Assembly (NCBI GenBank): GCA_002269645.1 | Contig: NIVC01002913.1 | Location: 24,646-88,645, forward strand | Direction: 5' to 3' | DNA length: 64,000 nt | Source: Macrostomum lignano | Lineage: Eukaryota | In this document: positions 31,907 through 64,000 of the stretch, piece by piece | Numbering within the stretch: position 1 is the stretch's first letter | Layout: each line of letters opens with the position of its first letter | The notes under the pieces: generated by a model | Databases searched by the model: none | Told to the model about the DNA's origin: nothing | What the model saw: the letters and a program-made list of their open reading frames with translations, nothing else | Program-made: the position numbers and the translations under genes

Positions 31907-32064
31907 CTGGCGGGTGTGGTGCGTGGAATTGGCGCCAATTCAAATTATTAATTTACCGCATGCACGCGGACAAGTACGTACGTGCCCAGGAAGTGAACCC
32001 AATGTACTTTAGCACTAGAATCGGACGCGGCGCCAGTGTGCTGCCCTGTCCCCTTATTGCTCAC

Positions 32065-32298
32065 CTGGTCTGTGTGGAACAGGTGGCAAACCACTTTGCA
32101 CGGGCCGGCAGTCCCTGTGGGGCAGCCGGCTCGCCTGACCATGAGCACCAGCAGGTTGTCCATGTCGGCCGTGTGAGTCACCGTCCGCAGGGCGTGGTCC
32201 ATCATGGCCAGCCTGGATGTCGGGTTCAGCACCATCAGGCGTTCGATGGACACGAATAGATCTACAGGCACACTGGGCTGCTTCTCGCCCTCTGGTGC
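32065..32298 (-). CDS. lin-10: Mint/X11 exon, PTB domain core
   Basis: APEGEKQPSVPVDLFVSIERLMVLN...MMDHALRTVTHTADMDNLLVLMVRR...VCHLF matches Mint APEGESQPMTEVDLFIS...MMDHPLRTISYIADIG. Phase 0/0 with cag| and |gtgag sites. Confidence 0.93.
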
Positions 32299-32458
32299 CT
32301 GTGGTGGCAGAGAAATTAGCGTGAAAATATTGTTGACCTTTGTAGGACTAAAAGTACTAGTAATATGCTGATTGGAAACAGCAGCGCTTCAGGCAAACTG
32401 AAGTCTTTAATCGACTGTAGCTGATGGTTGAACTAACCAATGAATCAACAACAGCAGC

Positions 32459-36324: not shown

Positions 36325-36723
36325 CCAAAAGCCTCATAGTAACAGATGAAGTTTATTCTCAACTGCAGTCAGCCTATAGCTGTCTGAACGTATATTCTGT
36401 GGTCTGAACAAGGGAAACATGCGGAAGAGCCTTGAATTTGCTGCGTAACGGCTAGGAGAAGAAGATAGAAATTGAAGAGACACGAAAAGCATTGGAAAAG
36501 AGGCTTTCTTGCGCGCAGCATCTGGTCCTTTCTCGGCCATCTGCGCACGAGCGAAATGGCCGTTGAGGGAGCCTTTTGCTGTCCGGGTCCAATTATTTCT
36601 TCGGCTATTAAAGCTGCTTGGAAATTGGCTGTCAGCTAGGAAAATAATGGAAATCTCCATTCGCTTTCAAGGAAAGGTAAAATATTTTTACTTGTCCTGC
36701 TCTGTCCAGTGCCTTGCAGTTTG

Positions 36724-38297
36724 ACAGTCTGACAGTCTGACAGTGTCTTGTAGAATCTGACAGTGTCCTGTAGAATCTGACAGTATCCTGTAGAATCTGA
36801 CAGTATCCTGTAGAATCTGACAGTGTCTTGTAGAATCTGACAGTGTCCTGTAGAATCTGACAGTATCCTGTAGAATCTGACAGTATCCTGTAGAATCTGA
36901 CAGTGTCTTGTAGAATCTGACAGTGTCCTGTAGAATCTGACAGTATCCTGTAGAATCTGACAGTATCCTGTAGAATCTGACAGTGTCTTGTAGAATCTGA
37001 CAGTGTCTTGTAGAATCTGACACTATCCTGTAGAATCTGACAGTATCCTGTAGAATCTGACAGTATCCTGTAGAATCTGACAGTGTCTTGTAGAATCTGA
37101 CAGTGTCCTGTAGAATCTGACAGTGTCTTGTAGAATCTGACAGTGTCTTTTAGAATCTGACAGTGTCATGTAGAATCTGACAGTATCCTGTAGAATCTGA
37201 CAGTGTCTTTTAGAATCTGACAGTGTCTTGTAGAATCTGACAGTGTCTTGAAGAATCTGACAGTGTCCTGTAGAATCTGACAGTGTCTTTTAGAATCTGA
37301 CAGTGTCATGTAGAATCTGACAGTATCCTGTAGAATCTGACAGTGTCTTTTAGAATCTGACAGTGTCTTGTAGAATCTGACAGTGTCTTGTAGAATCTGA
37401 CAGTGTCTTGTAGAATCTGACAGTGTCCTGTAGAATCTGACAGTATCTTGTAGAGTCTGACAGTCTCCTGTAGAGTCTGACAGTGTCATGTAGAATCTGA
37501 CAGTGTCCTGTAGAATCTGACAGTTTCTTGTAGAATCTGACAGTGTCTTGTAGAGTCTGACAGTGTCCTGTAGAGTCTGACAGTGTCCTGTAGAGTCTGA
37601 CAGTGTCTTGTAGAATCTGACAGTGACTTGTAGAATCTGACAGTGTCCTGTAGAGTCTGACAGTGTCTTGTAGAATCTGACAGTGACTATGTAGCCTAGT
37701 GGTCAGAGCGTCGGACTCACGACTTGAAGGTCGGGGGTTCGATTCCCGATCCTACTGGAACAATTTGTGTCCTTGAGCAAGACACTTAACTCTGCATTGC
37801 TTCAGTTCACCCAGCTGTAAAATGGGTGCCAGCATTAGCTGGGGTAATTGAGGGTGTGTGTGGCGACCCCCTGCAGTCCTTGGACTGAACAGCGTACTCA
37901 GCCTCAGATGCGCTGCGCAATGGCTGCGGCTGAGCTGTCGGTTGCACATCTGGCCCAATTGGGGCAGGTGTAATCAATTGTTATTATTGTTATAATTATA
38001 ATAATAATAGTATAATAGTATTAATAATATAATAGTATAATAGTATAATAGTATAATAGTATTAGTATTAATTATATTGACACCTAATTGTAGACTATAA
38101 TAATAATAGAATATTATTAATCTATTAGAATAGACACAGTATTCAGACTATACGAGCGTATTATTATAGTCTGACAGTGTCTTGTAGAATCTGACAGCAT
38201 CTTAAAGAGTCTGACAGTGTCTTGTAGAATCTGACAGCATCTTAAAGAGTCTGACAGTGTCCTGTAGAATCTGACAGCATCTTAAAGAGTCTGACAG
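36724..38297. repeat. 20-bp minisatellite CTGACAGTGTCYTGTAGAAT, interrupted by the SINE at 37689-38110
   Basis: Array 36724-37686 resumes at 38169-38297 after the SINE tail. Confidence 0.95.
37689..38110 (+). mobile_element. tRNA-derived CORE-SINE with AT-rich tail
   Basis: A box TAGCCTAGTGG and B box GGTTCGATTCC. 37766-37826 (tgtgtccttgagcaagacacttaac...cagctgtaaaatggg) aligns with the MIR CORE domain. (AAT/TATAA) tail, and a second copy at 17631-18450. Confidence 0.88.
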
Positions 38298-41005: not shown

Positions 41006-41774
41006 TTTCCCAAAGCTTTTTCACGGTTAGGTGAAATTTAAGCGTCATGATAGTAGAGGCTTTAAACTTTTAGGCAATATGAAATTCAGTGTCATATGAA
41101 ACACTTCCCCCTTTGTGGAAGAGCTGGCAATTCTGGTTGGCCTCCGCTGCCGCTTGCTAAAGCGGGTTTTAAAACCACCGATTGCAAAGAGCATGTACAC
41201 CGCATAAAAAACAGCACACACACACACAGAGCTGAGGGAGACTCGGCTCAACTGGGCAACTCCCTGTGAGACACCCGCACCGCACTGCACCAGTGCTGGT
41301 TCAGGCACCGGGCCTGCCCACCTCACCTCCTTCGAAACCTTCCTCTATAAATCACCCTCTATACAGTGGGCGAATAGCAGTTGCACTTTAGCCCAACACA
41401 CAGAGTGTGTGGGAGTTGGAGCTGATCCTTCTTTGCCAGTCGCAGCTGTCTACTCTCCCCCCTCTCTCTCTCAGCGCTTAGTCACTCACTCGCTCCCACT
41501 CCATATAGTCTTATTCTTTACTTAATTCGTACTGCATGGCTTTATGTTTTTTGTGCATATCTGTATTGTAGCTGTACTCTGCAGGACTCTTGTACGAGCT
41601 ATTAAATGCCTGTATGCCGTAATTTTCCTTGGGCATGTTGCTTAATCTTGTGTACTCTTAGTTTGACCCTTTGCCAGTTCACGTAGTTATCTTTAAATCA
41701 TTGTGTGTCATTTTTAGCGCATACAGAGGCAAACTGTGATCGTTGTGTGAAAGATGGCTAGCAGGGAGAGTAAA

Positions 41775-42105
41775 GGGATAGTGGCAGGGAGAGTGGCAGG
41801 GAGAGAGGAGGGAGAGGTCCAGGCTGTTTAAGAGACAGGGAGAGAGGAGGGAGAGGTCCAGGCAGTTTAAGAGACAGGGAGAGAGGAGGCAGAGGTCCAG
41901 GCTGTTTAAGAGACAGGGAGAGAGGAGGGAGAGGTCCAGGCTGTTTAAGAGACAGGGAGAGAGGAGGGAGAGGTCCAGGCTGTTTAAGAGACAGGGAGAG
42001 AGGAGGCAGAGGTCCAGGCAGTTTAAGAGACAGGGAGAGAGGAGGCAGAGGTCCAGGCAGTTAAGAGACAGGGAGAGAGGAGGCAGAGGTCCAGGCAGTT
42101 TAAGA
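41775..42105. repeat. 39-bp minisatellite (AGGTCCAGGCWGTTTAAGAGACAGGGAGAGAGGAGGSAG), ~8 copies
   Basis: 13-aa periodicity in ORF 41679-42116. Confidence 0.92.
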
Positions 42106-43070
42106 ATATCCTTCACGACGAAGCTGGTAGATTTTCACCTATCCACTATCTTTATCTCCTCTCATCCTCGTCGATTCCACTGCCCCGAATTCCTTCCCTC
42201 CTAATCTTGGCCAAACTCCACATCTTTGTCTGCATAAATTTATGATGCCATGCGGTGGGTAGGCAGCAGATCAATGCCAGTCGTTTCGCCCAGTATTTTT
42301 ATCGCTGCTCTCCCGTTTTTGGCAATAAAAGCCTCACGCCGAGCACTTAGCTTACTGGCAGAAGCCAGCTGAACTGACGATCCTGTTGCTAACTGTGTCT
42401 TACGTTCGACTGAGTACAGGAGCAGTCGGATTCGGCAGTATAGCTTGCAGGAATTAATTGGATCAACTGAGCAATGAGCATGCTTCCATTTCTATGCGAG
42501 GAGACAGAGAGGTGGTTAGGGAAGTGAGAGGCGGATCTGCTCACTGTAGCGAGCAGGTGGGGCGCTATCGGGGACAAATTGTGATTCCTCAGGGATAAAT
42601 CCCTGCCAACTCAATTAGGACTGCGGAACCGCTCGGAGACAATCGCGGAAATGAACAAACAGGTTTGCGTTCCCGAAATCCGCATGAATATTTGGCTTTG
42701 TGAATATCTGCAGAATACAGATGACTAAGCGCTAGTAACAATGATGCATGCGTGGTCAGGTGCATTCACATGTGAAATATAGAAATTCTAATAGCAATAA
42801 GACAGGGTAAACTGAAGCTCCGGTTATTTTTCCACTCTTCATCTTACCTGAGTTTCCATTCAACAGCGTACTAACCCAGGTCAATTCCGCTTAACTTAAA
42901 AGAGCTGGCGGCGAATACGTCAAACCACTTGGCTAGCGACTTAGCGTGTGTCAGAACCCATTCGTTAGACTTTATTCATACAACTTAACCCCTGGACCTA
43001 CCGCTTAAGGAAAAATACAGAGAGATCTGCTTGGATTACAGGAATGACTCGTAGGAAGGAGGGCTTCGGG

Positions 43071-44150
43071 CACCCTGGCGCAACGCTCTCGGAAACATCG
43101 GGCCACAAGCAGCGCTGACGGAAATTCTGGCCATTCCGCTAACTCCCTGAGCACAAACAAGCTCGCCAATACTGTACACAAGCACGCACTCATGCACACG
43201 CTCACACAGGGTGTACAGCGGTCCTTTGACTTTCTAATCGTCAGGCATGTACATTCTCTGTGTCTTGGGGGGCTGGCCCTCATGGCTGTGAACCGCACGA
43301 CAACCCCCTGGGCCAGGGGTCGGCAAAAGTTTTTTACCTCAAGGCCGGATGAAGAATCCAGCTCATGGCTACGGCCCAGGTTAGAGAGGAAAGGAGAGGG
43401 AGTAGAAGAGATAAGAAACAAGACAAGATGAGAAAAGAGGGGAGGGACGAGAGAAGGGAGAGAAGAGAGAGGGGAGATAGAGGGGAGAGAGAAGAAAGAG
43501 GAGAGAGGAGAGAGGAGAGAGGATAGACGGGGAGAAGAGAGGAGAGAGTAGAGAGGAGAGAGAGAGAGGAGAGAGGAGAGAGGATAGACGGGGAGAAGAG
43601 AGGAGAGAGTAGAGAGGAGAGAGAGAGAGAGGAGAGAGGAGAGAGGAGAGAGGATAGACGGGGAGAAGAGAGGAGAGAGTAGAGAGGAGAGAGAGAGAGA
43701 GAGGAGAGATAGAGAGGAGAGAGGAGAGAGGAGAGAGGAGAGAGAGAGGAGAGAGGAGAGGGTAGAGAGGAGAGAGGAGAGAGGAGAGGGAGAGAGGAGA
43801 GAGGAGAGAGGAGAGGGGAGAGAGGAGAGGGGAGAGAGGAGAGAGTAGAGAGGAGAGAGGAGAGAGGAGAGAGAGAGGAGAGAGGAGAGAGGAGAGAGAG
43901 AGAGAGGAGAGAGGAGAGAGGAGAGAGGAGAGACGGGGAGAAGAGAGGAGAGAGGAGAGAGGAGAGAAGAGACAAAAACATTTTAGCGAGCCGGATTGCT
44001 ATTGTGAAGTTTCAAAGGACCCGAGGGCCGGATAGAGACGCTTCGCGGGCCGGAGTTTGCCGACCCCTGCCCTAGGCCAATTTTCGTGCACAAACAAGCC
44101 CCAACTGAATGTGGCCTAGCACGGAATCAAACCAGGGGTCATGAGAGTTG
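43071..44150 (-). mobile_element. Second SINE-like family copy, split by hAT MITE 43314-44069
   Basis: Body 43071-43313 continues at 44070 (ccctaggccaattttcg...). B-box-like complement ggaatcaaacc at ~44123. The empty site is seen inverted at 48725-48750. Confidence 0.6.
43314..44069. mobile_element. Non-autonomous hAT (Buster/Charlie-like) MITE, 756 bp, with GA-rich core
   Basis: 14-bp TIRs CAGGGGTCGGCAAA/TTTGCCGACCCCTG. 8-bp TSD CCCTGGGC/CCCTAGGC (nnnTAnnn type). GGGCCGG subterminal motifs and a GA microsatellite at 43380-43975. Confidence 0.9.
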
Positions 44151-49716: not shown

Positions 49717-50347
49717 ATGGCTGAGAAAGGTGGCGGCCAAAACGGGGTGGATCAAGTCGCCTCAGCCGTGTCCAAGATGCAGCTGCAGCAGCAGCAGCAG
49801 CCGCTCATCAGCGGAACCCAATCCGCCGTTGACTGGCAGAAATTCTCCCTTCGCCAAGCGGAGCTGCTGCGCACCGTGGGCACCGGGACCTTCGGCCGCG
49901 TCATGGTCATCAGGGAGAAAACTTCTGGCGAGTATTTCGCATTGAAAATCCTCATCATAGAGGACGTGATGCGGCTCAAACAGGTTGAGCACGTCAAGAA
50001 TGAGAAATCGATTCTGAAGATGGTTAATCACCCATTCCTGGTTAGCCTGTTCTGGACCAATCACGACGTCAAGTTCCTGTACATGATCTTCGACTTCGTG
50101 TGCGGCGGCGAGATCTTCTCTTACTTGAGAACGGCCGGAACGTTCTCGAACTCCAGCGCACAGTTCTACTCGGCCGAGATTCTCACCGCCGTCATCTACC
50201 TGCACGACCTGTCGGTTGTCTACCGCGATTTGAAGCCGGAAAACTTGCTGCTAGACACGCAGGGCCACCTCAAGATAACGGACTTTGGATTCGCCAAGGT
50301 ACTGAAGGACCGGACTTACACGATGTGCGGCACGCCAGAGTATCTCG
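49717..50347 (+). CDS. PRKX: PRKX-type cAMP-dependent protein kinase catalytic subunit, exon 1
   Basis: GTGTFGRV, FALK, RLKQVEHVKNEK, YRDLKPEN, DFG and RTYTMCGTPEYL motifs. LFWT and VGTGTFG are closer to PRKX/Pka-C3 than to PKA-Calpha. Phase-1 donor G|gtgag at 50348. Confidence 0.95.
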
Positions 50348-50676
50348 GTGAGCGCTGATGGACCAGGGCGGGAAGAGGAGGGGGAGAGGCGGAGACGCAG
50401 CGATTGCAGGCACTCGAGCCTGCGGGTTCAGACAGAGGCAGCTGCAGCAGAAAGCGCTCGATGCCAAGCTGAGGTTTGAGAGAAAAATATTGCAATCCGA
50501 TAGATGGGTTCCAGCAGGTGCTGGCGACGCGGCCCTCTGTTCGATGAGATTGGATTGGCTTCAGATCTGCTCACACATCCTACGGGCGGCCTAGTATGCG
50601 GGATAGCTGGTATAATTTATATGGTATAAATACATTCTAATACTAAATTCAGTATACAGAAATCCGAAAAAATCGT

Positions 50677-50998
<322 letters not shown>

Positions 50999-52191
50999 CG
51001 CGAAAATCGAAGGCGAGGAGAGGCCAGCTGAGGAGCAACTCCGGGGACTCGCTCAGCTCGCAACTCACCCCTCCGGCTCCATCAAAATAGTGGCTGAATT
51101 TTTAATGGGCAAATTTCAAATTCCTTTTTTCCCTGGAAGTAGTGCACGGGGAGCTGAATGTGCAGTGCCGTGGGCCCCTCCCACTCCGGGAAAGAATTCT
51201 CTAGGGCTGCTCCTGCTCGACCAAGGAGACTTGTGCTGCACTTTTTTTCTTTCTTCTCCATCATCGCTTGAGCAGTCTTGTTGTCATGCTTTCTGCGAAC
51301 TTTCTGCGAACTTTAGTCTCCGGTCTGTAACTAGGCCAGGAAGTCAGTCCCGCATTACTCGTATTTGGCCGATTTTGGTTAATTATTAATGCTACAGATT
51401 CTGGTAAAAATCTTGGACTTTTTTGCCTCGCAACCCTGCACGCCAGCTCTGCTTGTGTCGGAGTGCTTATCATCTCACTGTCTTGCGTCTCCCGCCTCTT
51501 CGCTTCTATCAATCTGGCGCATTCGATTCAGCCTCTTCTTCATCAGCTCGTCCTTTCCCAACCCCAAAATAATATATGTTCCCCCAATGGTTGACGTCCC
51601 GGCCTCGCCCTCTCCTTTACTGCCACCCTCCAAAGCGACTGACCCCCGCTGGGAGCGGAGGCTCCGGCAGCCCTGTGGCCGTTTCTGAAATAAACTGCCC
51701 ATCCGACTTCTTGAAAACGAAGGCTGATGATTCTGTTCCCATTCTTGGGAACTTTTTCCTCCCTTCTTCTCTTCCCCTCCTCTTGGTTTACGAGCGAACA
51801 CCCCCTAGCCGTACTAGAAAATAGTTGCTGTGTGCTAAAAAGTTCGATGTTGGCAAACGGCAGACGGCTTCATCTGTAGTGCAGTGTGTGCTCAGCCGCC
51901 AGGCACTCCCCAATTCTAGTCCCTCTTTGGAAATCGATTTGGCCGCTGTGGAGGAAGCGGTTATTAGGAAGTGGGATTTTTCCCCGCTGTTACAAAGTTC
52001 GGCCACTAGTTTCTTCCCCTGGGGCCGCTGGCTGGGTAATCGAGGACTTGGGCTGCCCCCAGTGCCTGTCTGCAGACATGGCCTTATCTACTGCAGTATT
52101 TTTCCGCTTTTCAGATATGCTCCAGTTGGTTAAAACAAATTTATTCAGAAAAATTTTCTTATAAAATACAGACAATATTCACTATTTATCG

Positions 52192-52500
52192 TGCACTCAG
52201 TCTCACTAGCAATCTCACTCTCTCTCATCTCCCATCACTCAGTCTCACTAACAAGCTCACTCTCTCTCTTCTCCCATCACTCAGTCTCACTAGCAATCTC
52301 ACTCTCTCTCATCTCCCATCACTCAGTCTCACTAGCAATCTCACTCTCTATCTTCTCCCATCACTCAGTCTCACTAGCAATCTCACTCTCTCTCTTCTCC
52401 CATCACTCAGTCTCACTAGCAATCTCACTCTCTCTCTTCTCCCATCACTCAGTCTCACTAGCAGTCTCACTCTCATCCCTCATCACTCAGTGTCACTCTA
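52192..52500. repeat. 42-bp minisatellite (CACTCAGTCTCACTAGCAATCTCACTCTCTCTCTTCTCCCAT), ~7 copies
   Basis: 14-aa periodicity in ORF 52191-52601. Confidence 0.92.
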
Positions 52501-53067
52501 ATCTCACTCTCATTCACTATCTCTCACAATCTCACTCTGACTTTCATCCACTATCTCTCCTAATCTCAATTTCTACTACTATCTTTCAATCTTATTCTTA
52601 GCTCGTAATTTCTCTAATTAATCTCACCTACTATGTGCAGCACACTCTCAATCTATCTCAGTCAAGTCTCCAGTTCTTGCTTTTGCAGCCTATACTGTAC
52701 TTTATATTTTTCACTAATTGCAACAGAGGACACTAGGCAGAGAATAGCTACCCTCACCCGCCACAAAAGTCACTTAAATTCACGCTTCACACACGGAGCA
52801 ATTAGTAAGTCTATCAAGGAGGCTTCTTCACTCTATAACAATCATTCATGTCCAATCACCATCAAAGCCAGCGTGAACTCTCATCATCCTTGTCGAGCTT
52901 TTCGTGTTTGCACTTGCGCGTTGTGTGGAGTGCTTCCATCATTTTAGGATGGAGCTCTATAATTAGGGAAAGCTCCCATTTTCACTTTTAGCTTCTATTC
53001 TCTTGTCCTTACAATACGCTGGTCTCGTAAACAAATATCTTTCTCCTTCCAAGCAAAATTCCCTACA

Positions 53068-53177
53068 AGCGTGCAGGATTGATTATGTCTATGGTAAATC
53101 TCTCCCAGAGCGTGCAGGATTGATTATGTCTATGGTAAATCTCTCCCCAGAGCGTGCAGGATTGATTATGTCTATGG
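53068..53177. repeat. ~43-bp tandem repeat, ~2.5 copies
   Basis: agcgtgcaggattgattatgtctatgg occurs three times. Confidence 0.85.
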
Positions 53178-54194
53178 CCTAGCTTCATATGAGCTCAAAA
53201 CCTCGCAATGCTCTCACTATCAGTTATATAAACACTCATCTAGCCAGATTAAAAAGTTACTTTTCTATATTTATGCGCTTTCCTAAACTGCTTCCTAATT
53301 TTGTCTGTGAGGCCACTGCCGTGATGCCGTACTTACATGTATGAGGCCTATATACAATGATCCTGTGGAGTCAAACGGACATCAACTGATCATGCCTGAT
53401 TATTTGGCAATCTCATACAGCCTGGGGAAGCAGCTGTACGGTTTCTGTGGGGAATATCTAGATAGGCGAAGATATCCTACGGATGTTATAATTGCTTTCA
53501 GCGGACAGAGGCAAAAGAAGAGCTGAGTGAAAGAGACCTCGCAAACTCGCTTGCCCGAACAGGGACTGGGAGGTGGCTTTGTCGTATTACAGAAAATTAT
53601 CTCAATTAGGACAAGCGTTCGACCTAGTTCCCAGCCAGCCATGCCAAAAACATTGGACCTTTTTCGGGCGGTCAGCCAAGTCTGCTTTCCCGAAGCAATT
53701 CACAGCAGCGCTTAGGCCCCCTGCCCCCCCCCCCTATTTTTTTGCTTTCACTTTGTAGTCCGTAGGTAAACACGCAGCGGCTCCTGGGTTATGGGCATCG
53801 AATGGCTGGCAGAGCGCTTCTGTGTATTCGGTGCTTGCAGCTTGGCAGCAAGCCGTTCGCCAAAGACGCCTGACGGAGAAAAAGATGGAGAGAGGGAGAG
53901 AGAGAGGCAGGAAGAGAAGGTCGCTATACAGTTATGCTCCAATATGCTGGCTCTAAATCTGGAGCCCAATAAGCCAACACAAACAGCCTGTTTGCGCTGT
54001 ACCGCACAGAGTTCTTCTGTTCAGCGATTGACTCTTTAAGAAGACATTGATGTAGATAGAGAGACTGGCGCAGTCAACAAACACAAACTTTGAGAGATGC
54101 ATTGTCTGGCTAATGTGGAGCACCGTATTTGCAATACAAGCTGTGCTGACCTGCTGTTCACAAAACAAGCATTATCAATAACTCACGAATGCTC

Positions 54195-54598
<404 letters not shown>

Positions 54599-55294
54599 AA
54601 TTTTCTTGTTAGTTACATTTAATGTATCTCTCTGCAAAAGCAAGCCATGAAGACAAAATAAGAAATGGGAAGAGGAAAATTTCTAGAAGAAGAAATAACA
54701 ATCCGATTCAGATCGCCCTCGGCAAGCGGCCCGGTCGCCGGGGGATTTGGGAGTCGCCATGAAGGAGTAATGCGCATCTTTTTGCGGGTCGCTGCCAGTC
54801 TTGCCCCAGCTAGAGCACTGCATGGGAAATCTATGCGCTCAGGCAGACTCTCTTTCTCATCTCAGCCGTTAGTAGCCGTTTGGGACTGTTTGAGCACCGG
54901 GTCTGTGAGAACCCACTCAGACCACCCCCCCCCCTGCTTCACGTTCCGCCATCGCAGAACTCTCTGCTCTGACAGTGAATTATGGATTTGCCCACAGTCC
55001 CATCTCTCCTGATCTGTATAATCAAAGAGGTCCAATCGAATAAAAATATTGTACATCAGATTGAATGGCTTTGAGCAGTCGGACTCAGATGATGAATATC
55101 AAGTACCCTGGCCAGCACGATTCGAGCCAATCATTTTCGTTCACCCGTCGGTCACGCCAGTGAGCCAGAAAGCTCTGCTGAACAGATAATCCAAAGACAG
55201 TTTAATTTTAGTCGGCAAGAACTTGTACTTTCCCGAGCCGCAAAAGTGCAGAGCATCACTGAGAGCAGATACCGACGGGAGCCGCTTATCTGTC

Positions 55295-55709
55295 TGACTG
55301 TCTCAGTGGCTGTTAGTGACTGTCTCAGTGGCTGTTAGTGACTGTTTTAGTGACTGTCTCAGTGGCTGTTAGTGACTGTTTTAGTGACTGTCTCAGTGGC
55401 TGTTAGTGACTGTTTTAGTGACTGTCTCAGTGGCTGTTAGTGACTGTTTTAGTGACTGTCTCAGTGGCTGTTAGTGACTGTCTCAGTGGCTGTTAGTGAC
55501 TGTCTCAGTGGCTGTTAGTGACTGTTTTAGTGACTGTCCCAGTGGCTGTTAGTGACTGTCTCAGTGGCTGTTAGTGACTGTCTCAGTGGCTGTTAGTGAC
55601 TGTCTCAGTGGCTGTTAGTGACTGTCTCAGTGGCTGTTAGTGACTGTCTCAGTGGCTGTTAGTGACTGTTTTAGTGACTGTCTCAGTGGCTTTTAGTGAC
55701 TGTCTCAGT
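55295..55709. repeat. 22-bp minisatellite TGACTGTCTCAGTGGCTGTTAG with 12-bp TGACTGTTTTAG inserts
   Basis: Visible directly. Confidence 0.95.
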
Positions 55710-55879
55710 GTATCAGTGCCCCGCCTGCCTGTCTAAACAAACACAGAGGGAAGGACTGTCGATCAGCCCGAATTCATAGCCGCGATCGCAGTGAATCAGC
55801 TCTCATAGCTTGTATATTTCTCAGCAGAGGTCGGCACATATCGGTCAGCAGAGCTAAAATCTCAAAGCTCTGAAGCTAC

Positions 55880-56505
55880 TCAGATCTTTTTGCTCAGAAT
55901 ACGCAGAGCAGTGGCCTCGAAGAACTTCAGCACCACCTGGACGTCCTGCTCGTCGACTTCGCCAGGCAGTCGCTCGGTCTCCAGCTCCTCTCTCTCCAGG
56001 CTGATCTCTCCAGTGCGCTTGTTTTGGATCACCAGCACGTCCCTGGCCAGCTTGAACGAGGCCCGGACCTCCAGCACCACCAAGTCGAAGTTTCCATCAT
56101 TCCTGACGAAGCCGTAGACGCAGATGTACTTGGTGTTCTCCGGGTCGCTGGCCGGGTTGAACAGCATCTTGTGCTCGAACCACTTGCCCGGCTCGGCCTC
56201 CTTGATCTGGTCGAACACCTTCTCCTTGATCTCCGCCTGGTCGGCCGGCGGAATGTCGAACCTCGGCACCATGATGTCGACGTACCTGTCGTAGAAGCTG
56301 GCCCGGAGACCATTCACCTTAGACAGGCTGGATGACTGGGAGAAGTACTCGTAGCCCTGGCCAACAATGCGCCCGATCACCTCGCTGGAGTTGCGCCGTT
56401 CCTCAACCAGACGGTCGACGGCGTCCAGACCCGAGATGGCCTTCCTGATGAGGCCACGCAGCGCCTCGTGCGACTCCTGAGCGCTGGCGCCCGACCAGGC
56501 CAGGG
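55880..56505 (-). CDS. Nested secreted protein of unknown family, exon 2
   Basis: Non-repetitive 208-codon open frame with strong GC3 bias. The supplied ORF starts at GTG with an in-frame TGA just upstream, so splicing is required. Acceptor ttttcccgcag at 56506-56507, phase 1. Confidence 0.88.
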
Positions 56506-56589
56506 CTGCGGGAAAACCGGAGTTGATGTCGGATTGCACAGTGCGAGTTCAGGCTTACAGATTCTGAATTCTTTGGGTTTACACAATTT

Positions 56590-57365
56590 TAGGATTAGAG
56601 ATTATCCAGGATTGGGGAATATTCAGGATTAGGGAATATATAAAAGATTAGGGAATATTCTGGATTAGGGAATATATAAGGAATTAGGGAATATTCTGGA
56701 TTAGGGAATATATAAGGGATTAGGGAATATATAAGGGATTAGGGAATATATAAGGGATTAGGGAATATATAAGGGATTAGGGAATATATAAGGGATTAGG
56801 GAATATATAAGGGATTAGGGAATATATAAGGGATTAGGGAATATATAAGGGATTAGGGAATATATAAGGGATTAGGGAATATATAAGGGATTAGGGAATA
56901 TATAAGGGATTAGGGAATATATAAGGGATTAGGGAATATATAAGGGATTAGGGAATATATAAGGGATTAGGGAATATATAAGGGATTAGGGAATATATAA
57001 GGGATTAGGGAATATATAAGGGATTAGGGAATATATAAGGGATTAGGGAATATATAAGGGATTAGGGAATATATAAGGGATTAGGGAATATATAAGGGAT
57101 TAGGGAATATTCTGGATGGGGAATATTCTGGATTAGGGAATATTCTGGATAGGGAATATTCTGGATTAGGGAATATTCGGGGTTAGGGAATATTCGGGGT
57201 TAGGGAAAAATTCGGGATTAGGGAATATTCGGGATTGGGAAAAATTCGAGATTAGGGAATATTCGGGATTGGGGAATATTCGGGATTAGGGAATATTCGG
57301 GATTGGGGAATATTCGGGATTAGGGAATATTCGGGATTGGGGAATATTCGGGATAGGGAATATTG
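56590..57365. repeat. 19-bp telomere-motif satellite (TTAGGGAATATATAAGGGA)n with degenerate flanks
   Basis: Homogeneous core at 56701-57108. Flanks carry ttagggaatattc(t/g)gga variants. Confidence 0.97.
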
Positions 57366-58084
57366 GGAACTAGTAAACAGCGGACCCAGTTATTTTATGA
57401 TGAAATGAAACCATTTTTACGAGCTATATCACCCAATTTTGCTACACGCAGTTCAAAATGATACCCGCTAAGTGAAGCGAAATGCCTACACATTCGAGCT
57501 GTTCGCACACTGCTATCTTTTTTCGCCCTCCCTCGCTTTCCCTCTCGATTTTGTTTTCGGCTCCGCTTGGCAACACGGCTAACCGAAGCTTCGTCCGGAT
57601 AAATTCGTCCTGCCAACTTCGCTTAAAACTGCGGGCCCAGTGCTTGGCCGCGGGAGCATTGCGTAGGGAAGACAGGGTGCAACTTCTTATATAGTTACAA
57701 GCTTTAGTCCTCGGAGAGGCAGAACCGCTTTAGAAAAAGCAGAGGCGACACTTTTTCTGCCCCAAAGACCCCGGTCCTATCCTCCCAATGTTGGAACATT
57801 TTTCACTCGATATTCTCTCTCCCCCATCCACTAATTCTCTTAGGCTTCTGCATCTTTCTGGGTTTTTCAGTCTTCTTCTTTCGCCTCAATTATTTTCTTC
57901 TATTTTGTGCCCGCCTTTCTCAGCTCTCGTTCGGTAGCGAAATCAATTTTTGGGCATCTGACAGGGTCTGAATCGAGTTTTAATTAAATAAACTTGTTAA
58001 TTTGTTGCTAATATAGATAGTAATACTAGGAATTTAAAAAGAAATATAGAAAAATAACTAATATACCTAAACAACAGATTGTAC

Positions 58085-58800
58085 ATTATATACAATAAAC
58101 AAAAAACCAATCGACAAAAAATCGCAAACCACAGACAGCAAATTACAAACCACAGATGAGTAACAAACCACAAGACAACAAATCACAAAACAATTGACAA
58201 CAAATCACAAACCACAGACAACAAATCACATACCAATTGACAACAAATCACAAACCAATTGACAACAAATTTCAAACCAATTGACAATAAATCACAAACC
58301 ACAGACAACAAATCACAAACCACGGACAACAAATCACAAACCACAGACAACAAATCACAAATCACAGACAAAAAATCACAAACCACAGACAACAAATAAC
58401 ATACCAATTGACAACAAATCACAAACCAATTGACAACAAATTGCAAACCAATTGACAATAAATCACAAACCACAGACAACAAATGACAAACCACAGACAA
58501 CAAATGACAAACCACAGACAACAAATCACAAACCACAGACAACAAATCACAAACCACAGACAACAAATCACAAACCACAGACAACAAATCACAAACCACA
58601 GACAACAAATCACAAACCACAGACAACAAATCACAAACCAATTGACAACAAATTGCAAACCAATTGACAATAAATGACAAACCACAGACAACAAATCACA
58701 AACCACAGACAACAAATCACAAACCACAGACAACAAATCACAAACCACGGACAACAAATGACAAACCACAGACAACAAATGACAAACCACGGACAAATCA
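58085..58800. repeat. 21-bp minisatellite ACAAATCACAAACCACAGACA
   Basis: 7-aa periodicity of the ORFs here. Confidence 0.95.
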
Positions 58801-58811
58801 CAATAACTTAC

Positions 58812-58848
58812 CAAAGGCAAGGGCAAAAATCAGAGCGCAATACTTCAT
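58812..58848 (-). CDS. Nested secreted protein, exon 1 (signal peptide MKYCALIFALAF)
   Basis: aaaATG at 58848, 37 nt, consensus donor G|gtaagt (58811-58806). Joins to 56505 to give MKYCALIFALAFALAWSGASA|QESHE. Confidence 0.85.
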
Positions 58849-59478
58849 TTTGCTAGTAGAAGTTTTTCAATTTCAACAGACAATCGTAGAGTCCAGGGAC
58901 AACAAACAGCAAGACACGACTTCAGTAAAGTTGATTGCAGCGCAAATTTATGCTTGACTCCCGCCCAACTGCTCCCGAGCTTGCTTATCTCGCACCACTG
59001 CCTGCTCGATTCCCACATTTCGACATTTCCAGTTTTTTTGTCGTCAAGCATTTCTAAGACGTTTCTTCCGCTAACTTGAGCAGTTCAAATTGCTTTTTCT
59101 TGTCAGCGGGAAGATCGCGCGAGAAGTTTTTTTACATAATTCTGCCTCCACACCTGTCAGAGTCTGGGAGTCGTCTCAGCTGGTGCCTCCGGCTGTCATT
59201 CACAGCCAGGCGGCCCCTACCTGTCAACTACATGTTCTTCTTGCTGAGCTCCCCATTTCACCGGCGCTCTGGCATTCGGCGACAGGTGGCAACAAATGTC
59301 ACTGCTGGCAATTGTGTTATTGATGGCTGGCGTTTGGCGCGTTCTGTAATGTCTGTTCTGTCTAATATTTGTCCATTCTGTAACCCTGCATGCATACATT
59401 TCTTTGCATTTTTGAGTCGGTCTGTCCGTCTGTCTATGTGTCTTAGTGTCTTAGTGTCTTAGTGTCTTAGTGTCTTTG

Positions 59479-59933
<455 letters not shown>

Positions 59934-60656
59934 ATCTGTCTTTCTTACTTCCTCACTCGTATGATTGCTTCTTTCCCACAGTCTAGTAAAGCCAAGCCTA
60001 GACTCTTTTCTCAGGTCGTTTTTTGCCATAGTGTTCCGAGAAACATGGAGAAAGCAGGGGTTTTTACGCCAAAATCAACTTGATATCAGAAATGTTAGTC
60101 TGATTTTGTCATTCGAAGCCTTAGTCACAAATTTTTACTTCAAGTTTTCTTTGAATGTCCACTAATTTTGCTCCACCGCGGATTCAATTGCTTTCTTTTT
60201 TTCCTCTAGCATTGCTTGCCTCTATCCCGCCTACTTAATTACTGCTTATTTAGTTTGCAAGGAACTTTTGAACTTTTTTGCCAGTTCTCTGCCGTCTGCG
60301 CGGTTTGCCAGAAACGGTGATTACTTCTGGCTCGTGTTCTCCCGTTCCACACGCACCCTTCGCCAGCTTCAAGGCTGTCTGCTGCATCAGCGAATAAAAG
60401 TGCTTCCTCCGGGGGGGATTTTCCAGGTGCAGCGATCCCCAAAGCCGGAATATTTTTTAGCACCTCTCCTCTTCCAGTCTTGAATAAATCTATTCCGACG
60501 GACAGACTGGCCGAAAGAAGCTTGATTGACGGCTTTGGATGCAGAGTTAAATTGATTGGATTACCGAAATGCGCGGCTGCTGGCGTCAGTCTGATAGCGC
60601 ACTGGCACTGGGCTGCTAGCGCGAATGGCCTGCTTGACTTCAAAGGCTAAAAACAC

Positions 60657-61426
60657 TTTGAGCACAGTCAGTATTTGAGCACAGTCAGTATTTGAGCACA
60701 GTCAGTATTTGAGCACAGTTAGTATTTGAGCACAGTCAGTATTTGAGCACAGTCAGTATTTGAGCACAGTCAGTATTTGAGCACAGTCAGTATTTGAGCA
60801 CAGTCAGTATTTGAGCACAGTCAGTACTTGAGCACAGTCAGTATTTAAGCCCAGTCAGTACTTAAGCACAGTCAGTACTTTAGCTTAGTAAGTATTTGAG
60901 CACAGTCAGTACTTGAGCACAGTCAGTATTTGAGCACAGTCAGTACTTGAGCACAGTCAGTATTTGAGCACAGTCAGTATTTGAGCACAGTCAGTATTTG
61001 AGCACAGTCAGGATTTGAGCACAGTCAGTATTTAAGCACAGTCAGTATCTGAGCACAGTCAGTATTTGAGCACAGTCAGTACTTGAGCACAGTCAGTACT
61101 TGAGCACAGTCAGTACTTGAGCTTAGTCAGTATTTGAGCACAGTCAGTACTTGAGCACAGTCAGTATTTGAGCACAGTCAGTATTTGAGCACAGTCAGTA
61201 CTTGAGCACAGTCAGTATTTGAGCACAGTCAGTGCTTTTGCTGTTTCTCTGAATGTCCGGGTTTGTTATTCCGAACGTATTTACGAACGTTATTACGCTC
61301 GTAGTATTGTCTCTAGTTTGCTATAGCCATTTACGACAATAATCTGATCCAACTTGAGCACACTCAGTACTTGAGCACAGTCAGTATTTGAGCACAGTCA
61401 GTACTTGAGCACAGTCAGTATTTGAG
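60657..61426. repeat. 17-bp minisatellite TTGAGCACAGTCAGTAY, interrupted at 61232-61352
   Basis: Period 17. A non-repetitive insert matches 62983-63071. Confidence 0.95.
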
Positions 61427-61789
61427 TCATTTTTCCAGGGAAACTCCTACAGGAACATTCGATTGGGACTCGAACGAAAAACGAACCATGGAAATTCGAG
61501 AAATTTGACAAAGCCGAAATGCATGTTCGTGACTGAGGCTCAAGCGCAAAAATTTTGTGAATGAATTTGGATAGATAAAGGGCGAGGCAGTTCCGAGCGG
61601 CCAGAACACGCGATGCCTCATAGCCTCAAATCTCATCCTGGAGCTCCCAGTCATATGAGCAACCCACCAGTGGGGGCGGGGATTAATTGCTATTCCTAAA
61701 GATCCCTCTTCCCCAAAAATAGAGTTCGTGCTGGAAAAGAACGCGTCAGGGATTCGAAAAGCTCAAAGAGCTCAAAGAGCATGGCTGAT

Positions 61790-62345
61790 ATGGAGTGCGG
61801 AGTGAGGTGCGAAGTGAGGTAGATGTGGAGTGGGGTGGTTGCGGAGTGGGGTGAGTGCAGAGTGAGGTAGTTGCGGAATGAGGTTGGTGCGGAGTGAGTT
61901 AGTTGCGGAATGAGGTGGTTGCGGAGTGAGGTTGGTGCGAAGTGAGGTTGGTGCGGAGTGAGGTTGGTGCGGAGTGAGGTTGGTGCGGAGTGAGGTTGGT
62001 GCGGAGTGAGGTTGGTGCGGAGTGAGTTAGTTGCGGAATGAGGTGGTTGCGGAGTGAGGTTGGTGCGAAGAGAGGTTGGTGCGGAGTGAGGTTGGTGCGG
62101 AGTGAGGTTGGTGCGGAGTGAGGTTGGTGCGGAGTGAGGTTGGTGCGGAGTGAGGTTGGTGCGGAGTGAGGTTGGTGCGGAGTGAGGTTGGTGCGAAGAG
62201 AGGTTGGTGCGGAGTGAGGTTGGTGCGGAGTGAGGTTGGTGCGGAGTGAGGTTGGTGCGGAGTGAGGTTGGTGCGGAGTGAGGTTGGTGCGTAGTGAGGT
62301 TGGTGCGGAGTGAGGTGGGTGCAGAATGAGGTGGGTGCAGATTGG
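61790..62345. repeat. 16-bp G-rich minisatellite GTGAGGTTGGTGCGGA
   Basis: Visible directly. A related array lies at 63072-63540. Confidence 0.93.
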
Positions 62346-62484
62346 GGTGGCGTGGATGAGATGTGCGTAGCAAACACAATTGTACTTTTTAGGAATATTA
62401 GAAACAGTTACTGCTTTTAAGGAGCAAGCAAACGCATACCATATTGAAATCTGCTAATCCGCACCAAATCTGCTTTCTCTTCAG

Positions 62485-62933
62485 CACCGGAGATCATCCA
62501 AGGCAAGGGCTACAACCGCGCTGTAGATTACTGGGCCCTCGGGGTTCTAATCTACGAAATGCTGGTCGGCACTCCCCCGTTCTACGACGACAATCCGATG
62601 CAGATCTACCAGAAGATTCTGTCCGGCAAGTTCGACTTTCCTCGTGACAGTCCGGTGGATCCGGTCGCTCGCGACATTGTCCGCAAACTGCTGGTGCAGG
62701 ACCGCACCAAGCGGCTGGGCAATATGAAGAGCGGGCCAGACGATGTCCGCAACCATCGCTGGTTCAAGGGAGTCAACTGGCTGGACGTGGAGCTGCGCAA
62801 GATGGCGCCCCCCATTGTGCCCCAGGTGCAGCATCCCGGGGATACGCGCTGCTACGATGTCTACGACGAGCAGGATTGGAAGAAGGTGCCGTCAGCTAGC
62901 GCCGCGGGCCAGGAGCACTTCAGAGATTTTTAA
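62485..62933 (+). CDS. PRKX: PRKX-type kinase, exon 2
   Basis: Acceptor tttctcttcag (62484) restores G|CA = A of APE. Encodes APEIIQGKGYNRAVDYWALG...PPFYDDNP..IYQKIL...DRTKRLGNMK.G..DV..HRWF and a C-terminal FRDF hydrophobic motif. Join gives 359 aa. Confidence 0.95.
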
Positions 62934-63071
62934 AAATATCCCATTGGTTCTGTCACCCTGTCTGTGCTGTTTCCGAGCCCGTGTGCTTTTGCTGTTTCTC
63001 TGAATGTCCGGGTTTGTTACTAGTATTGTCTCCAGTTTGCTATAGCCATTTACGACAATAATCTGATCCAA

Positions 63072-63540
63072 AATGAGGTAGGTGCGAAGTTTTGTTGGTG
63101 CGGAGTGAGGTAGGTACGGAGTGAGGTGGTTTCTGAGTAGGTGGTTGCGGAGTGAGGTGGGTGCGGAGTGAGTGGGTACGGAGTGAGGTGGTTTCTGAGT
63201 GGTGTGGTTGCGGAGTGAGGTGGGTGCGGAGTGTTGTGGTTGCGGAGTGAGGTGGGTGGGGAGTGAGGTAGGTGCGGAGTGAGGTAGGTGCGAGTGAGGT
63301 GGGTGCGGAGTGAGGTGGGTGCGGAGTGAGGTGGGTGCGAAGTGAGGTAGGTACGGAGTGAGGTGGTTTCTGAGTAGGGTGGTTGCGGAGTGAGGTGGGT
63401 GCGGAGTGAAGTGGGTACGGAGTGAGGTGGTTTCTGAGTGAGGTGGGTGCGGAGTGGTGGTTGCAGAGTGAGTGGGTGGGGAGTGAGGTAGGTGCGGAGT
63501 GAGGTGGGTGGGGAGTGAGGTGGTTTCGGAGTTGGGTTGG
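63072..63540. repeat. Degenerate 16-bp G-rich minisatellite (same family as 61790-62345)
   Basis: gtgaggt(a/g)ggtgcgga units. Confidence 0.9.
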
Positions 63541-64000
63541 TGCTGGGAGAAGTAGTTCTACCGAATCTTCTACCGACTAGCTTAGTCACTAGAAAAGTAG
63601 AAAATAATTTCAAATTAGGAAAAACGGCAAAACTTCACTCCTACAGTGTGTGCTAAGTCTGAGATTCAGACTAATACAAATTCTACACGTTTGTATGTGT
63701 GCTGCTTTGTGAATGCCTCACTAGCTCTGTAAAATATCCCCAGAATTCCCTCGAATGCGCCACTGTGCACGGCTGCGTATTTAACTGTAAATTTTCCCTA
63801 TTTTGTTCTTAGAAATGTCACAAAACTTTGTTTGCATTGGAATCAACCCCTGTCCTCCCCCGAAACCACCAGTGCCCAAACGTTATTCTGTTCCATTGTA
63901 GAATCACAGGACATCTGTCCCATCACTAGATAGCATGTGACTACTGTTGCTTGATTATCGTGTGTGAATCAGATTTAACTGCAAAGCTGAGAGCTCGATG

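What the first reader, a model, noticed from the sequence alone, without database searches (positions are those of the whole stretch)
55880..58848. Hidden antisense gene for a 220-aa secreted protein nested in the PRKX intron
Seen in sequence: the 219-aa ORF has no ATG (GTG start, upstream stop). A 37-nt exon 2.3 kb away (58848-58812, aaaATG...G|gtaagt) splices in phase to give a textbook signal peptide MKYCALIFALAFALAWSGASA followed by QESHE. The mature ~199-aa protein has one Cys, predicted helical ends and a beta-rich middle (KYICVYGFVRNDGNFDLVVLEVRASFKLARDVLVI). Its intron is filled by two satellites. I recognise no named domain. My unverified recollection is that similar FKLAxDV(L/I)V-containing unannotated secreted proteins occur patchily in small invertebrates. 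Inference: a candidate member of an uncharacterised secreted family (mucus, defence or pore-forming effector), possibly of patchy or horizontal distribution.
Basis: partly seen in the sequence, partly recalled or inferred. Interest (0 to 1): 0.78.

Follow-up and report, generated by a model that had tools for sequence, protein, structure and literature searches.

The report
Secreted flatworm protein, protist-type orphan family
A real two-exon gene hidden inside a kinase intron of the flatworm Macrostomum lignano encodes a small secreted protein. It belongs to an unnamed family otherwise seen mainly in ciliates and environmental protists; the fold resembles only uncharacterised giant-virus proteins and the function is unknown.

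Summary
A 37-nt exon (58848-58812, minus strand) splices in phase to the 626-nt exon (56505-55880). The product is a 220-aa protein with a classical signal peptide, and two satellites fill the 2.3-kb intron.

The window is Macrostomum lignano (assembly GCA_002269645.1). The gene lies antisense in the 12.1-kb intron of a PKA-catalytic-like kinase gene, and a near-identical second copy exists on another contig.

The mature 199 aa form one copy of a ~190-aa domain. An exhaustive HMMER search found 122 cluster representatives (E down to 4e-33). About 70% of those that start with Met have an N-terminal signal-like stretch, and many carry two or three tandem copies.

Of 30 representatives looked up, only two carry organism names: an M. 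lignano paralogue and the ciliate Trimyema finlayi. A neighbouring gene places one further homologue-bearing metagenome contig in ciliates.

There is no Pfam match in 52 members, no PDB match by sequence profile and no PDB match by Foldseek. The AlphaFold2 model (pLDDT 88) matches only uncharacterised giant-virus proteins (E 3e-7, TM 0.56).

The conserved residues are core or turn residues, so the protein is probably non-enzymatic. Function, expression and origin (vertical or horizontal) remain open. I found no evidence for pore formation.

The parts
58812..58848 (-). Exon 1 coding part: ATG plus the first 12 codons and 1 nt of the signal peptide. Donor is G|GTAAGT.
   Evidence: It is identical in the second genomic copy, L001.
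56506..58811 (-). Intron, 2,306 nt, GT...AG, phase 1. It consists mostly of two satellites plus a 749-nt unique core.
   Evidence: The intron is 2,125 nt in L001, so the satellite copy number differs between the copies.
58113..58796 (.). Intronic satellite: 21-bp unit x32 (GACAACAAATCACAAACCACA).
56609..57363 (.). Intronic satellite: 19-bp unit x41.7 (GGATTAGGGAATATATAAG).
55880..56505 (-). Exon 2 coding part including the TGA stop (55880-55882). Acceptor is ttttcccgcag|CC.
   Evidence: The collection's gene call P0001 covers it from 5 nt inside the exon.
56480..56505 (-). Last 26 nt of the signal-peptide coding sequence (..ALAWSGASA). Predicted cleavage is after ASA21.
   Evidence: hydrophobicity and the -3/-1 rule; heuristic only.
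55883..56479 (-). Mature protein of 199 aa, forming one copy of the uncharacterised ~190-aa alpha/beta domain ('D' domain, F-x-LAPD-x-LVI motif).
   Evidence: phmmer found 122 hits with best E 4e-33. The family HMM matches positions 3-193 at E 5e-45. The AlphaFold2 model has pLDDT 87.9.
49717..50347 (+). Host gene exon A: PKA-catalytic-like AGC kinase, N-terminal 210 codons.
   Evidence: The gene call in L002 maps to window 49717-62933.
50348..62484 (+). Host gene intron, 12,137 nt, phase 1. It contains the whole antisense gene.
62485..62933 (+). Host gene exon B: kinase C-lobe and tail, ending ..EHFRDF*.

Best explanation
This is a genuine, intact, two-exon M. lignano gene, nested antisense in the single large intron of a PKA-like kinase gene.

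Shown:
- Splicing the 37-nt first exon to the main exon creates an N-terminal signal peptide.
- The remaining 199 aa are one copy of a ~190-aa alpha/beta domain.
- That domain defines an un-curated family of secretory proteins with one to three tandem copies. The named or placeable members are ciliates and marine or environmental eukaryotes, plus at least one other M. lignano gene (PAA93599.1, architecture SP-X-D-D).

Inferred:
- The protein enters the ER, loses residues 1-21, and leaves the cell or fills a secretory organelle as an acidic ~23-kDa non-enzymatic module.
- The family-wide conserved positions are aromatic core residues, hairpin turns (LAPD, S..GG) and a helix cap. There is no catalytic-type constellation.

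My preferred mechanism, of low certainty, is a structural or binding cargo of regulated secretory organelles or mucus. By analogy this would be extrusome or mucocyst-type granules in ciliates and gland or rhabdite-type secretions in the worm.

The family probably shares ancestry with uncharacterised giant-virus proteins of the same predicted fold.
For: - Gene model. The model is identical in the second copy.
- Organism and nesting.
- Native codon usage: GC3 is 0.86, against 0.85 for paralogue P0003 and 0.78 for the host kinase.
- Family: 122 representatives, 33 of them at E<=1e-10. The domain spans the whole mature protein and 36 proteins have two copies. The N-terminal 'X' domain is a third, divergent copy (hhalign probability 91%, E 1e-6).
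- Secretory character: 76 of 110 Met-starting hits have a hydrophobic N-terminus, against 1 of 110 in an internal control.
- Taxa: M. lignano PAA93599.1, PAA78934.1 and PAA93605.1; Trimyema finlayi and a Tara/MERC sequence. RuvBL1 next to homologue P0044 is closest to ciliate sequences, 82-83% identical to Tetrahymena, Ichthyophthirius and Pseudocohnilembus. The same sample, at similar coverage, carries P0022, P0044 and P0127.
- No characterised relative: Pfam negative for the protein and 52 members; PDB by sequence and profile negative; Foldseek against PDB gave best E 0.12 and TM <=0.27.
- Giant-virus matches: E 2.9e-7 to 2.7e-4; TM 0.56-0.58 for the best three and 0.34 for the fourth, over 173-208 aligned columns.
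- Conserved positions.
Against: - No transcript, junction read or protein evidence could be accessed.
- The existing gene call lacks exon 1.
- The two genomic copies are 99.7-100% identical, intron included. They give no test of purifying selection.
- The protein sits on a long branch (23-28% identity to everything, even its own paralogue).
- It has lost some of the best-conserved family residues: P146R, GG159-160 to IS, and G114E. A decaying or neo-functionalised copy is therefore not excluded.
- The granule or mucus-cargo role rests on analogy only.
- No downstream AATAAA is visible in the 180 nt after the stop codon, on visual reading only.
- Ninety-two of the 122 family representatives were never taxon-labelled.
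Confidence: 0.6

Rival explanations
1. Origin rival: the family entered the Macrostomum lineage by horizontal transfer from a phagotrophic protist (for example a ciliate) or a giant virus. It then duplicated and diverged. The window gene is an old, fully domesticated single-domain descendant.
For: - The named or placeable relatives outside M. lignano are ciliates.
- No other named animal appeared among the 30 clusters looked up.
- The full SP-X-D-D architecture is shared between M. lignano P0003 and AT-rich protist-type proteins.
- P0003 is intronless.
- The fold matches giant-virus proteins.
Against: - Codon usage is fully native (GC3 0.85-0.86).
- The gene has a spliceosomal intron.
- M. lignano paralogues are only ~26% identical to each other, so any transfer is ancient.
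- Ninety-two of the 122 representatives are unlabelled and may include other invertebrates. The closest relative of P0003 is P0004, 37% identical and of unknown taxon.
- The neighbour-joining tree is uninformative.
Confidence: 0.3
2. Function rival: the domain is a small-ligand or lipid carrier. The order of secondary-structure elements (helix, beta-hairpin, two helices, five strands, long C-terminal helix) recalls helix-grip (START/Bet v 1) and PAS or Cache-like binding modules. The secreted protein would shuttle or sense a hydrophobic molecule.
For: - Element order from the model.
- Weak local Foldseek hits to ARNT/AHR PAS-B domains (probability 0.54-0.63) and to a PYL1 Bet v 1-fold protein (ranks 30 and 45-48).
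- There are no catalytic-type conserved residues.
Against: - None of these hits is significant (E 0.3-0.44, TM <=0.27).
- No Pfam START, Bet v 1, PAS or Cache signal appeared in 52 members, even at E<=10.
- I had no coordinates to look for a cavity.
Confidence: 0.2
3. One reading: a pore-forming or defence effector.
For: Only generic features support it: the protein is secreted, small, beta-rich in its core and has an amphipathic N-terminal helix.
Against: - No similarity to aerolysin/ETX-MTX2, MACPF, actinoporin or ClyA-type families by Pfam, by PDB profile or by Foldseek.
- The family forms tandem multi-domain proteins with pro-regions. To my knowledge that is not typical of pore-forming toxins.
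Confidence: 0.06
4. The locus is a decaying or unexpressed relic, and the apparent first exon is a coincidence.
For: - There is no accessible expression evidence.
- Several highly conserved family residues are lost.
- The locus is embedded in satellite-rich intronic DNA.
Against: - The 199-codon domain is uninterrupted and matches the family HMM end to end (E 5e-45).
- The donor and acceptor are consensus sites, and the only strong in-phase candidate exon encodes exactly the element that homologues have.
- GC3 is 0.86, like expressed genes.
Confidence: 0.1
5. Assembly contamination by protist DNA.
For: The relatives are protist-type.
Against: The gene lies inside an intron of a metazoan PKA-like gene on two contigs (88.6 kb and 365.6 kb). 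It has host-like GC and GC3, whereas the ciliate contigs have 26-28% GC.
Confidence: 0.01

Closest known systems
M. lignano hypothetical protein BOX15_Mlig000053g1 (PAA93599.1 / A0A267H7R2; P0003). Related entries: PAA78934.1 and PAA93605.1.
   Same: Same species and the best hit (E 4e-33). It has the same domain, a signal peptide and the same codon bias.
   Different: It is 622 aa and intronless, with the architecture SP-X-D-D (three divergent repeats). It is only ~26% identical. The window gene has a single D domain and one intron.
Ciliate and environmental homologues, such as Trimyema finlayi EP00827_P006333 (P0060) and P0022, P0044 and P0127 from ERZ4201065.
   Same: Full-length domain match with the motifs GF..F, W, KY, F.LAPD.LVI and P..T..D..FF, and a secretory N-terminus.
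   Different: Many have a pro-region with a recurrent x-F-L-[G/D/E] motif and acidic or Pro-rich linkers, tandem domains, and AT-rich genes. The flatworm protein starts its domain directly after the signal peptide.
Uncharacterised Mimiviridae proteins in BFVD: Hyperionvirus A0A3G5A862, A0A650DA38, Terrestrivirus A0A3G4ZN21, Borely moumouvirus A0A6G6ADX5.
   Same: Similar length (192-266 aa). Foldseek gives significant matches over 173-208 aligned columns (E 2.9e-7 to 2.7e-4), with TM 0.56-0.58 for the first three and 0.34 for the fourth.
   Different: Only 9-12% identity. No sequence-level link was shown: the IMG/VR pattern scan was negative. Their function is also unknown.
Ciliate dense-core granule cargo (Paramecium trichocyst matrix proteins, Tetrahymena Grl proteins). 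This is an analogy recalled from my own knowledge.
   Same: Signal peptide, pro-region, tandem ~20-kDa acidic modules, large paralogue families and non-enzymatic character.
   Different: From memory, those proteins are described as coiled-coil or heptad-rich, whereas this domain has a beta-sheet core. I had no sequences for a comparison, so membership is untested.
UniProt A0A1I8HHY5, 'NERD domain-containing protein' (P0002).
   Same: It covers the same locus or allele (84% identity over 94% of the query).
   Different: It is a faulty 353-aa model: unrelated N- and C-terminal extensions, internal deletions and no signal peptide. The NERD name was not reproduced by Pfam even at E<=10.

Membership tests
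Un-curated ~190-aa secretory 'D' domain family (F-x-LAPD-x-LVI motif; no Pfam entry) | End-to-end profile match to the domain | tested here: met
   phmmer found 122 hits, with best non-self E 4e-33. The family HMM covers positions 3-193 at E 5e-45.
Un-curated ~190-aa secretory 'D' domain family (F-x-LAPD-x-LVI motif; no Pfam entry) | Conserved core and turn residues (G42, F46, G57, P77, W100, F107, K117-Y118, F142-x-L-A-P-D, S..GG, P172, D179, F186-F187) | tested here: inconclusive
   Most are present. P146 is R, GG159-160 is IS, S156 is T and G114 is E.
Un-curated ~190-aa secretory 'D' domain family (F-x-LAPD-x-LVI motif; no Pfam entry) | N-terminal signal peptide | tested here: met
   It is present only after splicing exon 1. 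By the same hydrophobicity heuristic, 76 of 110 homologues have one.
NERD (nuclease-related) domain, the name carried by the UniProt entry | Match to the NERD profile | tested here: not met
   There was no Pfam hit for P0002 at E<=10 or for the window protein. The PROSITE profile was not available.
Pore-forming toxins (aerolysin/ETX-MTX2, MACPF, actinoporin, ClyA-type) | Sequence or fold similarity to any such family | tested here: not met
   Pfam was negative for 52 members. The PDB profile search was negative. No such family appeared among the listed top 50 Foldseek PDB hits.
Helix-grip (START / Bet v 1, SRPBCC) | Three-dimensional superposition on a helix-grip structure | tested here: not met
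   Only PYL1 (8ay7) appeared, at E 0.41, TM 0.23 and rmsd 13 A. The order of elements is similar.
PAS / Cache-like binding domains | Five-stranded PAS core that superposes | tested here: inconclusive
   There were local hits to ARNT/AHR PAS-B over 63-67 residues, with rmsd 3.5-3.9 A, probability 0.60-0.63 and E 0.3-0.44. No Pfam PAS or Cache signal was found.
Giant-virus uncharacterised protein cluster (BFVD A0A3G5A862 and others) | Shared full-length fold | tested here: met
   Foldseek gave E 2.9e-7, 6.8e-7 and 1.9e-5, TM 0.56-0.58, over 196-208 aligned columns.
Giant-virus uncharacterised protein cluster (BFVD A0A3G5A862 and others) | Detectable sequence homology | not testable with these tools
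   The viral sequences could not be retrieved. The IMG/VR motif scan found no relative.
Ciliate trichocyst-matrix / Grl granule-lattice proteins | Sequence homology to TMP or Grl | not tested
   No TMP or Grl sequence was available. The one paper I opened (PMC2133959) holds no sequence text.
PKA catalytic / PRKX subfamily (host gene) | AGC kinase domain closest to PKA-C | tested here: met
   The 359-aa spliced product matches PKA C-alpha at E 3.4e-110. PRKX versus PKA-C was not resolved.

The most novel reading that the evidence does not exclude
The D domain would be a new fold family shared by alveolate-type protists and giant viruses, serving as self-assembling cargo of extrusive secretory organelles. 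An ancestor of Macrostomum would have captured it horizontally and redeployed it in flatworm gland or rhabdite secretions. That would be a rare protist- or virus-to-animal transfer of a secretory-organelle building block.
Probability: 0.12. Interest if true: 0.75.

Novelty: categorically new. Interest (0 to 1): 0.5.

Why it matters
The locus corrects a public gene model. The true product has a signal peptide, and the 'NERD domain' name is unfounded.

It also brings to light a sizeable 'dark' family: at least 122 clusters at 50% identity, with one to three repeats per protein. The family has no Pfam entry and no solved relative, and it links ciliates, marine protists, giant viruses (at fold level) and one animal.

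If the animal copies prove horizontally acquired, or if the family proves to build secretory granules, it would bear on how secretory organelles and mucus or adhesive secretions evolve.

'Categorically new' here means only that no characterised family could be matched. The biology may turn out to be ordinary once a structure or an expression pattern exists.

Tried and rejected
1. Word-indexed search with the family profile A1. It was flooded by 8,000 candidates and returned only 4 hits, so it gave no taxon names.
2. Scans for relatives in public collections. The IMG/VR scan was negative. The JGI metagenome scan with the window protein found no close relative.
3. Single-sequence AlphaFold2. The model was too poor to use (pLDDT 49).
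4. Selection test between the two genomic copies. It was impossible: they are 99.7-100% identical, intron included.
5. Neighbour-joining tree of 130 domains. The window protein sits on a long branch and its placement is not trustworthy.
6. Looking up the spliced 220-aa protein in transcript-derived assemblies.
7. Literature searches for sample accessions, for gene and protein identifiers, and for Macrostomum horizontal transfer. None returned anything relevant.
8. The trichocyst/Grl literature gave no sequence to compare.
9. Telomere repeats on the homologue contigs: none found.
10. Ciliate nuclear code in ERZ4201065. No TAA or TAG reads as Gln in the RuvBL1 exons, and P0022 ends at TAA, so this organism uses a standard-like code.
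11. A second family copy in the window: none found.
Full report
**1. The observation**

On the minus strand the window holds a 219-codon ORF (55880-56539). It has a GTG start and no usable in-frame ATG.

A mini-exon lies 2.3 kb upstream. It reads aaaATGAAGTATTGCGCTCTGATTTTTGCCCTTGCCTTTG|gtaagt at 58848-58812. The acceptor ttttcccgcag|CC lies at 56505. Joining the two gives a 663-nt CDS in frame, encoding 220 aa that begin MKYCALIFALAFALAWSGASA|QESHE.

I enumerated every in-phase, stop-free ATG..GT candidate in the 5,978 nt upstream, which is the rest of the host intron. There were 48 candidates and two had a GTRAG donor. Only the proposed exon produces a hydrophobic N-terminus.

Tandem Repeats Finder confirms the two intronic satellites: a 19-bp unit x41.7 at 56609-57363 and a 21-bp unit x32 at 58113-58796. 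The mature protein is 22.8 kDa, pI 5.2, with one Cys and one N-x-S site.

**2. Where it is**

The exon-2 product is carried by two contigs of GCA_002269645.1. The related UniProt entry and the paralogues are named Macrostomum lignano.

The window is the end of NIVC01002913.1 (100% match over 14 kb). The second copy, on NIVC01001965.1, has identical exons and a 99.7%-identical unique intron core. It differs in satellite length, with an intron of 2,125 nt against 2,306 nt. The two are therefore alleles or very recent duplicates, and they give no test of selection.

The host gene on the plus strand has two exons (49717-50347 and 62485-62933) separated by a 12,137-nt phase-1 intron. Its 359-aa product matches PKA C-alpha at E 3e-110. 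From memory, the C-terminal tail looks PRKX-like, but I did not resolve PRKX from PKA-C.

The nested gene has GC3 0.86. That compares with 0.85 for its M. lignano paralogue and 0.78 for the kinase. The composition is native, so this is not contamination.

**3. What the protein is**

Pfam finds nothing, even at E<=1. The word-indexed search found only the existing exon-2 gene call (P0001, 206 aa, no signal peptide) and UniProt A0A1I8HHY5. The latter is a 353-aa mis-model of the same locus named 'NERD domain-containing'. I could not reproduce that name.

The exhaustive HMMER search of 1.84 billion cluster representatives gave 122 hits at E<=1e-3, 33 at E<=1e-10, and a best non-self hit of 4e-33. 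Identities were 17-30%.

An iterated local search shows that the homologous unit is about 190 aa and spans the whole mature protein. Thirty-six proteins have two copies. Thirteen long proteins (nine of 600-770 aa) add a ~170-aa N-terminal 'X' domain. Profile-profile comparison shows X to be a third, divergent copy of the same domain (probability 91%, E 1e-6, 145 columns).

The best-conserved positions are G42, F46, G57, P77, W100, F107, K-Y, F-x-L-A-P-D-x-x-V-I, S-x-x-G-G, P172, D179 and F-F. They map to strands, hairpin turns and a helix cap of the model. I see no catalytic-type pattern, which suggests a non-enzymatic module; this is an inference.

The window protein keeps most of these positions but has R for the Pro of LAPD, IS for GG and E for G114. 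It sits on a long branch.

**4. The family is secretory**

Of 110 hits that start with Met, 76 have a hydrophobic stretch in their first 30 residues. Only 1 of 110 has one in an internal control segment. Most of the others start inside the domain or pro-region and look like truncated calls.

Many homologues carry a pro-region between the signal peptide and the domain. It contains a recurrent x-F-L-[G/D/E] motif, such as LRFLAD, SLRFLGE, LSFLGDDD and TKFLDES, followed by acidic or Pro-rich linkers. The flatworm protein has no pro-region.

This independently supports the first-exon model: the element that splicing adds is the element the family has.

**5. Who has it**

I could look up 30 of the 122 representatives.

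- Named members are M. lignano PAA93599.1, PAA78934.1 and PAA93605.1 and the anaerobic ciliate Trimyema finlayi (EukProt EP00827). One cluster also holds a Tara/MERC marine sequence.
- The rest are unnamed contigs from ENA, Logan and JGI.
- For the 63.9-kb contig that carries P0044, I spliced the neighbouring RuvBL1 gene. Its best named matches are Tetrahymena (83%), Ichthyophthirius (83%), Pseudocohnilembus (82%) and Paramecium (78%).
- That sample (ERZ4201065) carries P0022, P0044 and the X-D-D protein P0127 at similar coverage. I take these as one organism; this is an inference.
- The contigs are 26-28% GC. The organism appears to use TAA as a stop and has no TAA/TAG-as-Gln in the RuvBL1 exons.
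- The closest relative of the M. lignano paralogue is P0004 (37% over 590 aa), of unknown taxon.

The distribution is therefore protist-rich, with M. lignano the only named animal. But 92 representatives were not labelled, so 'patchy' is an impression rather than a result.

**6. Structure**

With 52 family sequences, AlphaFold2 gave pLDDT 87.9 and pTM 0.67. The elements in order are helix 2-29, hairpin 30-58, helices 60-73 and 78-93, five antiparallel strands 100-171, and helix 177-198. The single-sequence model was unusable.

Foldseek against the PDB found nothing better than E 0.12 and TM 0.27. The top weak hits are actin-capping protein alpha. There are also local PAS-B hits at probability <=0.63 and a Bet v 1-fold protein at E 0.41. 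Sequence and profile searches of the PDB were empty.

Against predicted viral structures there are four significant matches, all uncharacterised Mimiviridae proteins of 192-266 aa: Hyperionvirus, an unnamed entry, Terrestrivirus and Borely moumouvirus. E-values run from 2.9e-7 to 2.7e-4. TM is 0.56-0.58 for the first three and 0.34 for the fourth, and identity is 9-12%. A motif scan of IMG/VR found no sequence-level relative.

**7. How it most likely works**

Shown:
- an intact two-exon gene;
- a signal-peptide-like N-terminus;
- a single copy of a conserved secretory domain;
- no enzyme-like conservation.

Inferred: the protein is imported into the ER, cleaved after ASA21, possibly glycosylated at N30, and released or stored as an acidic ~23-kDa module.

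My preferred role is non-enzymatic cargo of regulated secretory organelles or mucus, at roughly 0.3-0.35. The grounds are the family's pro-regions, its tandem modules, its paralogue numbers and its abundance in ciliates. This rests on analogy with ciliate granule proteins recalled from my own knowledge, and I could not test that link.

A ligand- or lipid-carrier role is the main functional rival (~0.2). It rests on element order and non-significant PAS or helix-grip hits. A pore-forming role has no support.

The origin question is separate. Horizontal acquisition from a protist or giant virus is plausible (~0.3). It would be ancient, given the native codon usage, the intron and the 26% identity between paralogues.

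**8. Novelty and verdict**

The locus is partly in databases, but mis-modelled and misnamed. The family has no Pfam model and no solved or characterised relative. I therefore rate it as lying outside known kinds, with the caveat that 'dark' families are common and the biology may be ordinary. Interest is moderate (0.5): the finding is a clean gene-model correction plus an uncharacterised family with an unusual ciliate, giant-virus and flatworm spread, but function and expression are unproven.

Noticed in passing
window 31154-32388 (-): Two adjacent ORFs encode a PTB/PID domain (E 2e-8) followed by two PDZ domains (E 9e-23). That is the domain set of an X11/Mint (APBA)-like adaptor gene. A 563-aa ORF overlapping 29955-31643 (-) is mostly low-complexity repeat.
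   Followed up: partly
window 55527-55710: A 22-bp tandem repeat (TTAGTGACTGTCTCAGTGGCTG, x7) starts about 170 nt downstream of the stop codon and bounds the likely 3' UTR.
   Followed up: no
window 3600-4940, 8300-9040, 30100-31050, 35070-37750, 41680-42200, 43000-44010, 50590-51100, 59455-60080, 61700-63630: The window is very rich in short-unit satellites. They create many long spurious ORFs of the SLLSPL, CLSV, YLSI and TDRQ types. ORF length alone is meaningless here.
   Followed up: no
window 20285-20677 (+), 23454-23864 (-), 25834-26235 (-); also 13777-14166 and 16232-16621 (+): There are repeated near-identical ORFs: INWKDDFFKSASRRSQNSGTPYEIQL... in three copies, and RCSRVYALKCTEFHCAKN... 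in two copies about 2.45 kb apart. Neither has a Pfam hit. They are probably dispersed or tandem repeat elements.
   Followed up: partly
homologues P0026, P0034, P0033, P0075, P0117, P0122 and others (N-terminal 30-90 residues): A recurrent x-F-L-[G/D/E] motif follows the signal peptide and is often followed by acidic or Pro-Lys-rich linkers. It may be a pro-peptide sorting or cleavage signal. Some instances fit an R-x-L-x-[E/D] pattern.
   Followed up: partly
P0003 residues 21-207 and the equivalent regions of P0004, P0005, P0010-12, P0015, P0025, P0029, P0040, P0050 and P0085: The N-terminal 'X' domain, with two conserved Cys, is a remote homologue of the D domain (hhalign probability 91%). 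The long proteins are therefore triple repeats.
   Followed up: yes
L007 (ERZ4201065 NODE_307) 360-3110 (-): The RuvBL1 gene has at least six exons. Its closest named relatives are oligohymenophorean ciliates, yet none of its Gln codons is TAA or TAG. A family member in the same sample ends at TAA. This looks like a ciliate with a standard-like genetic code.
   Followed up: partly
UniProt A0A1I8HHY5 (P0002): The public entry for this locus is a faulty model. It has about 100 unrelated N-terminal residues, internal deletions and a read-through C-terminus. Its 'NERD domain' name is not reproducible with Pfam.
   Followed up: yes
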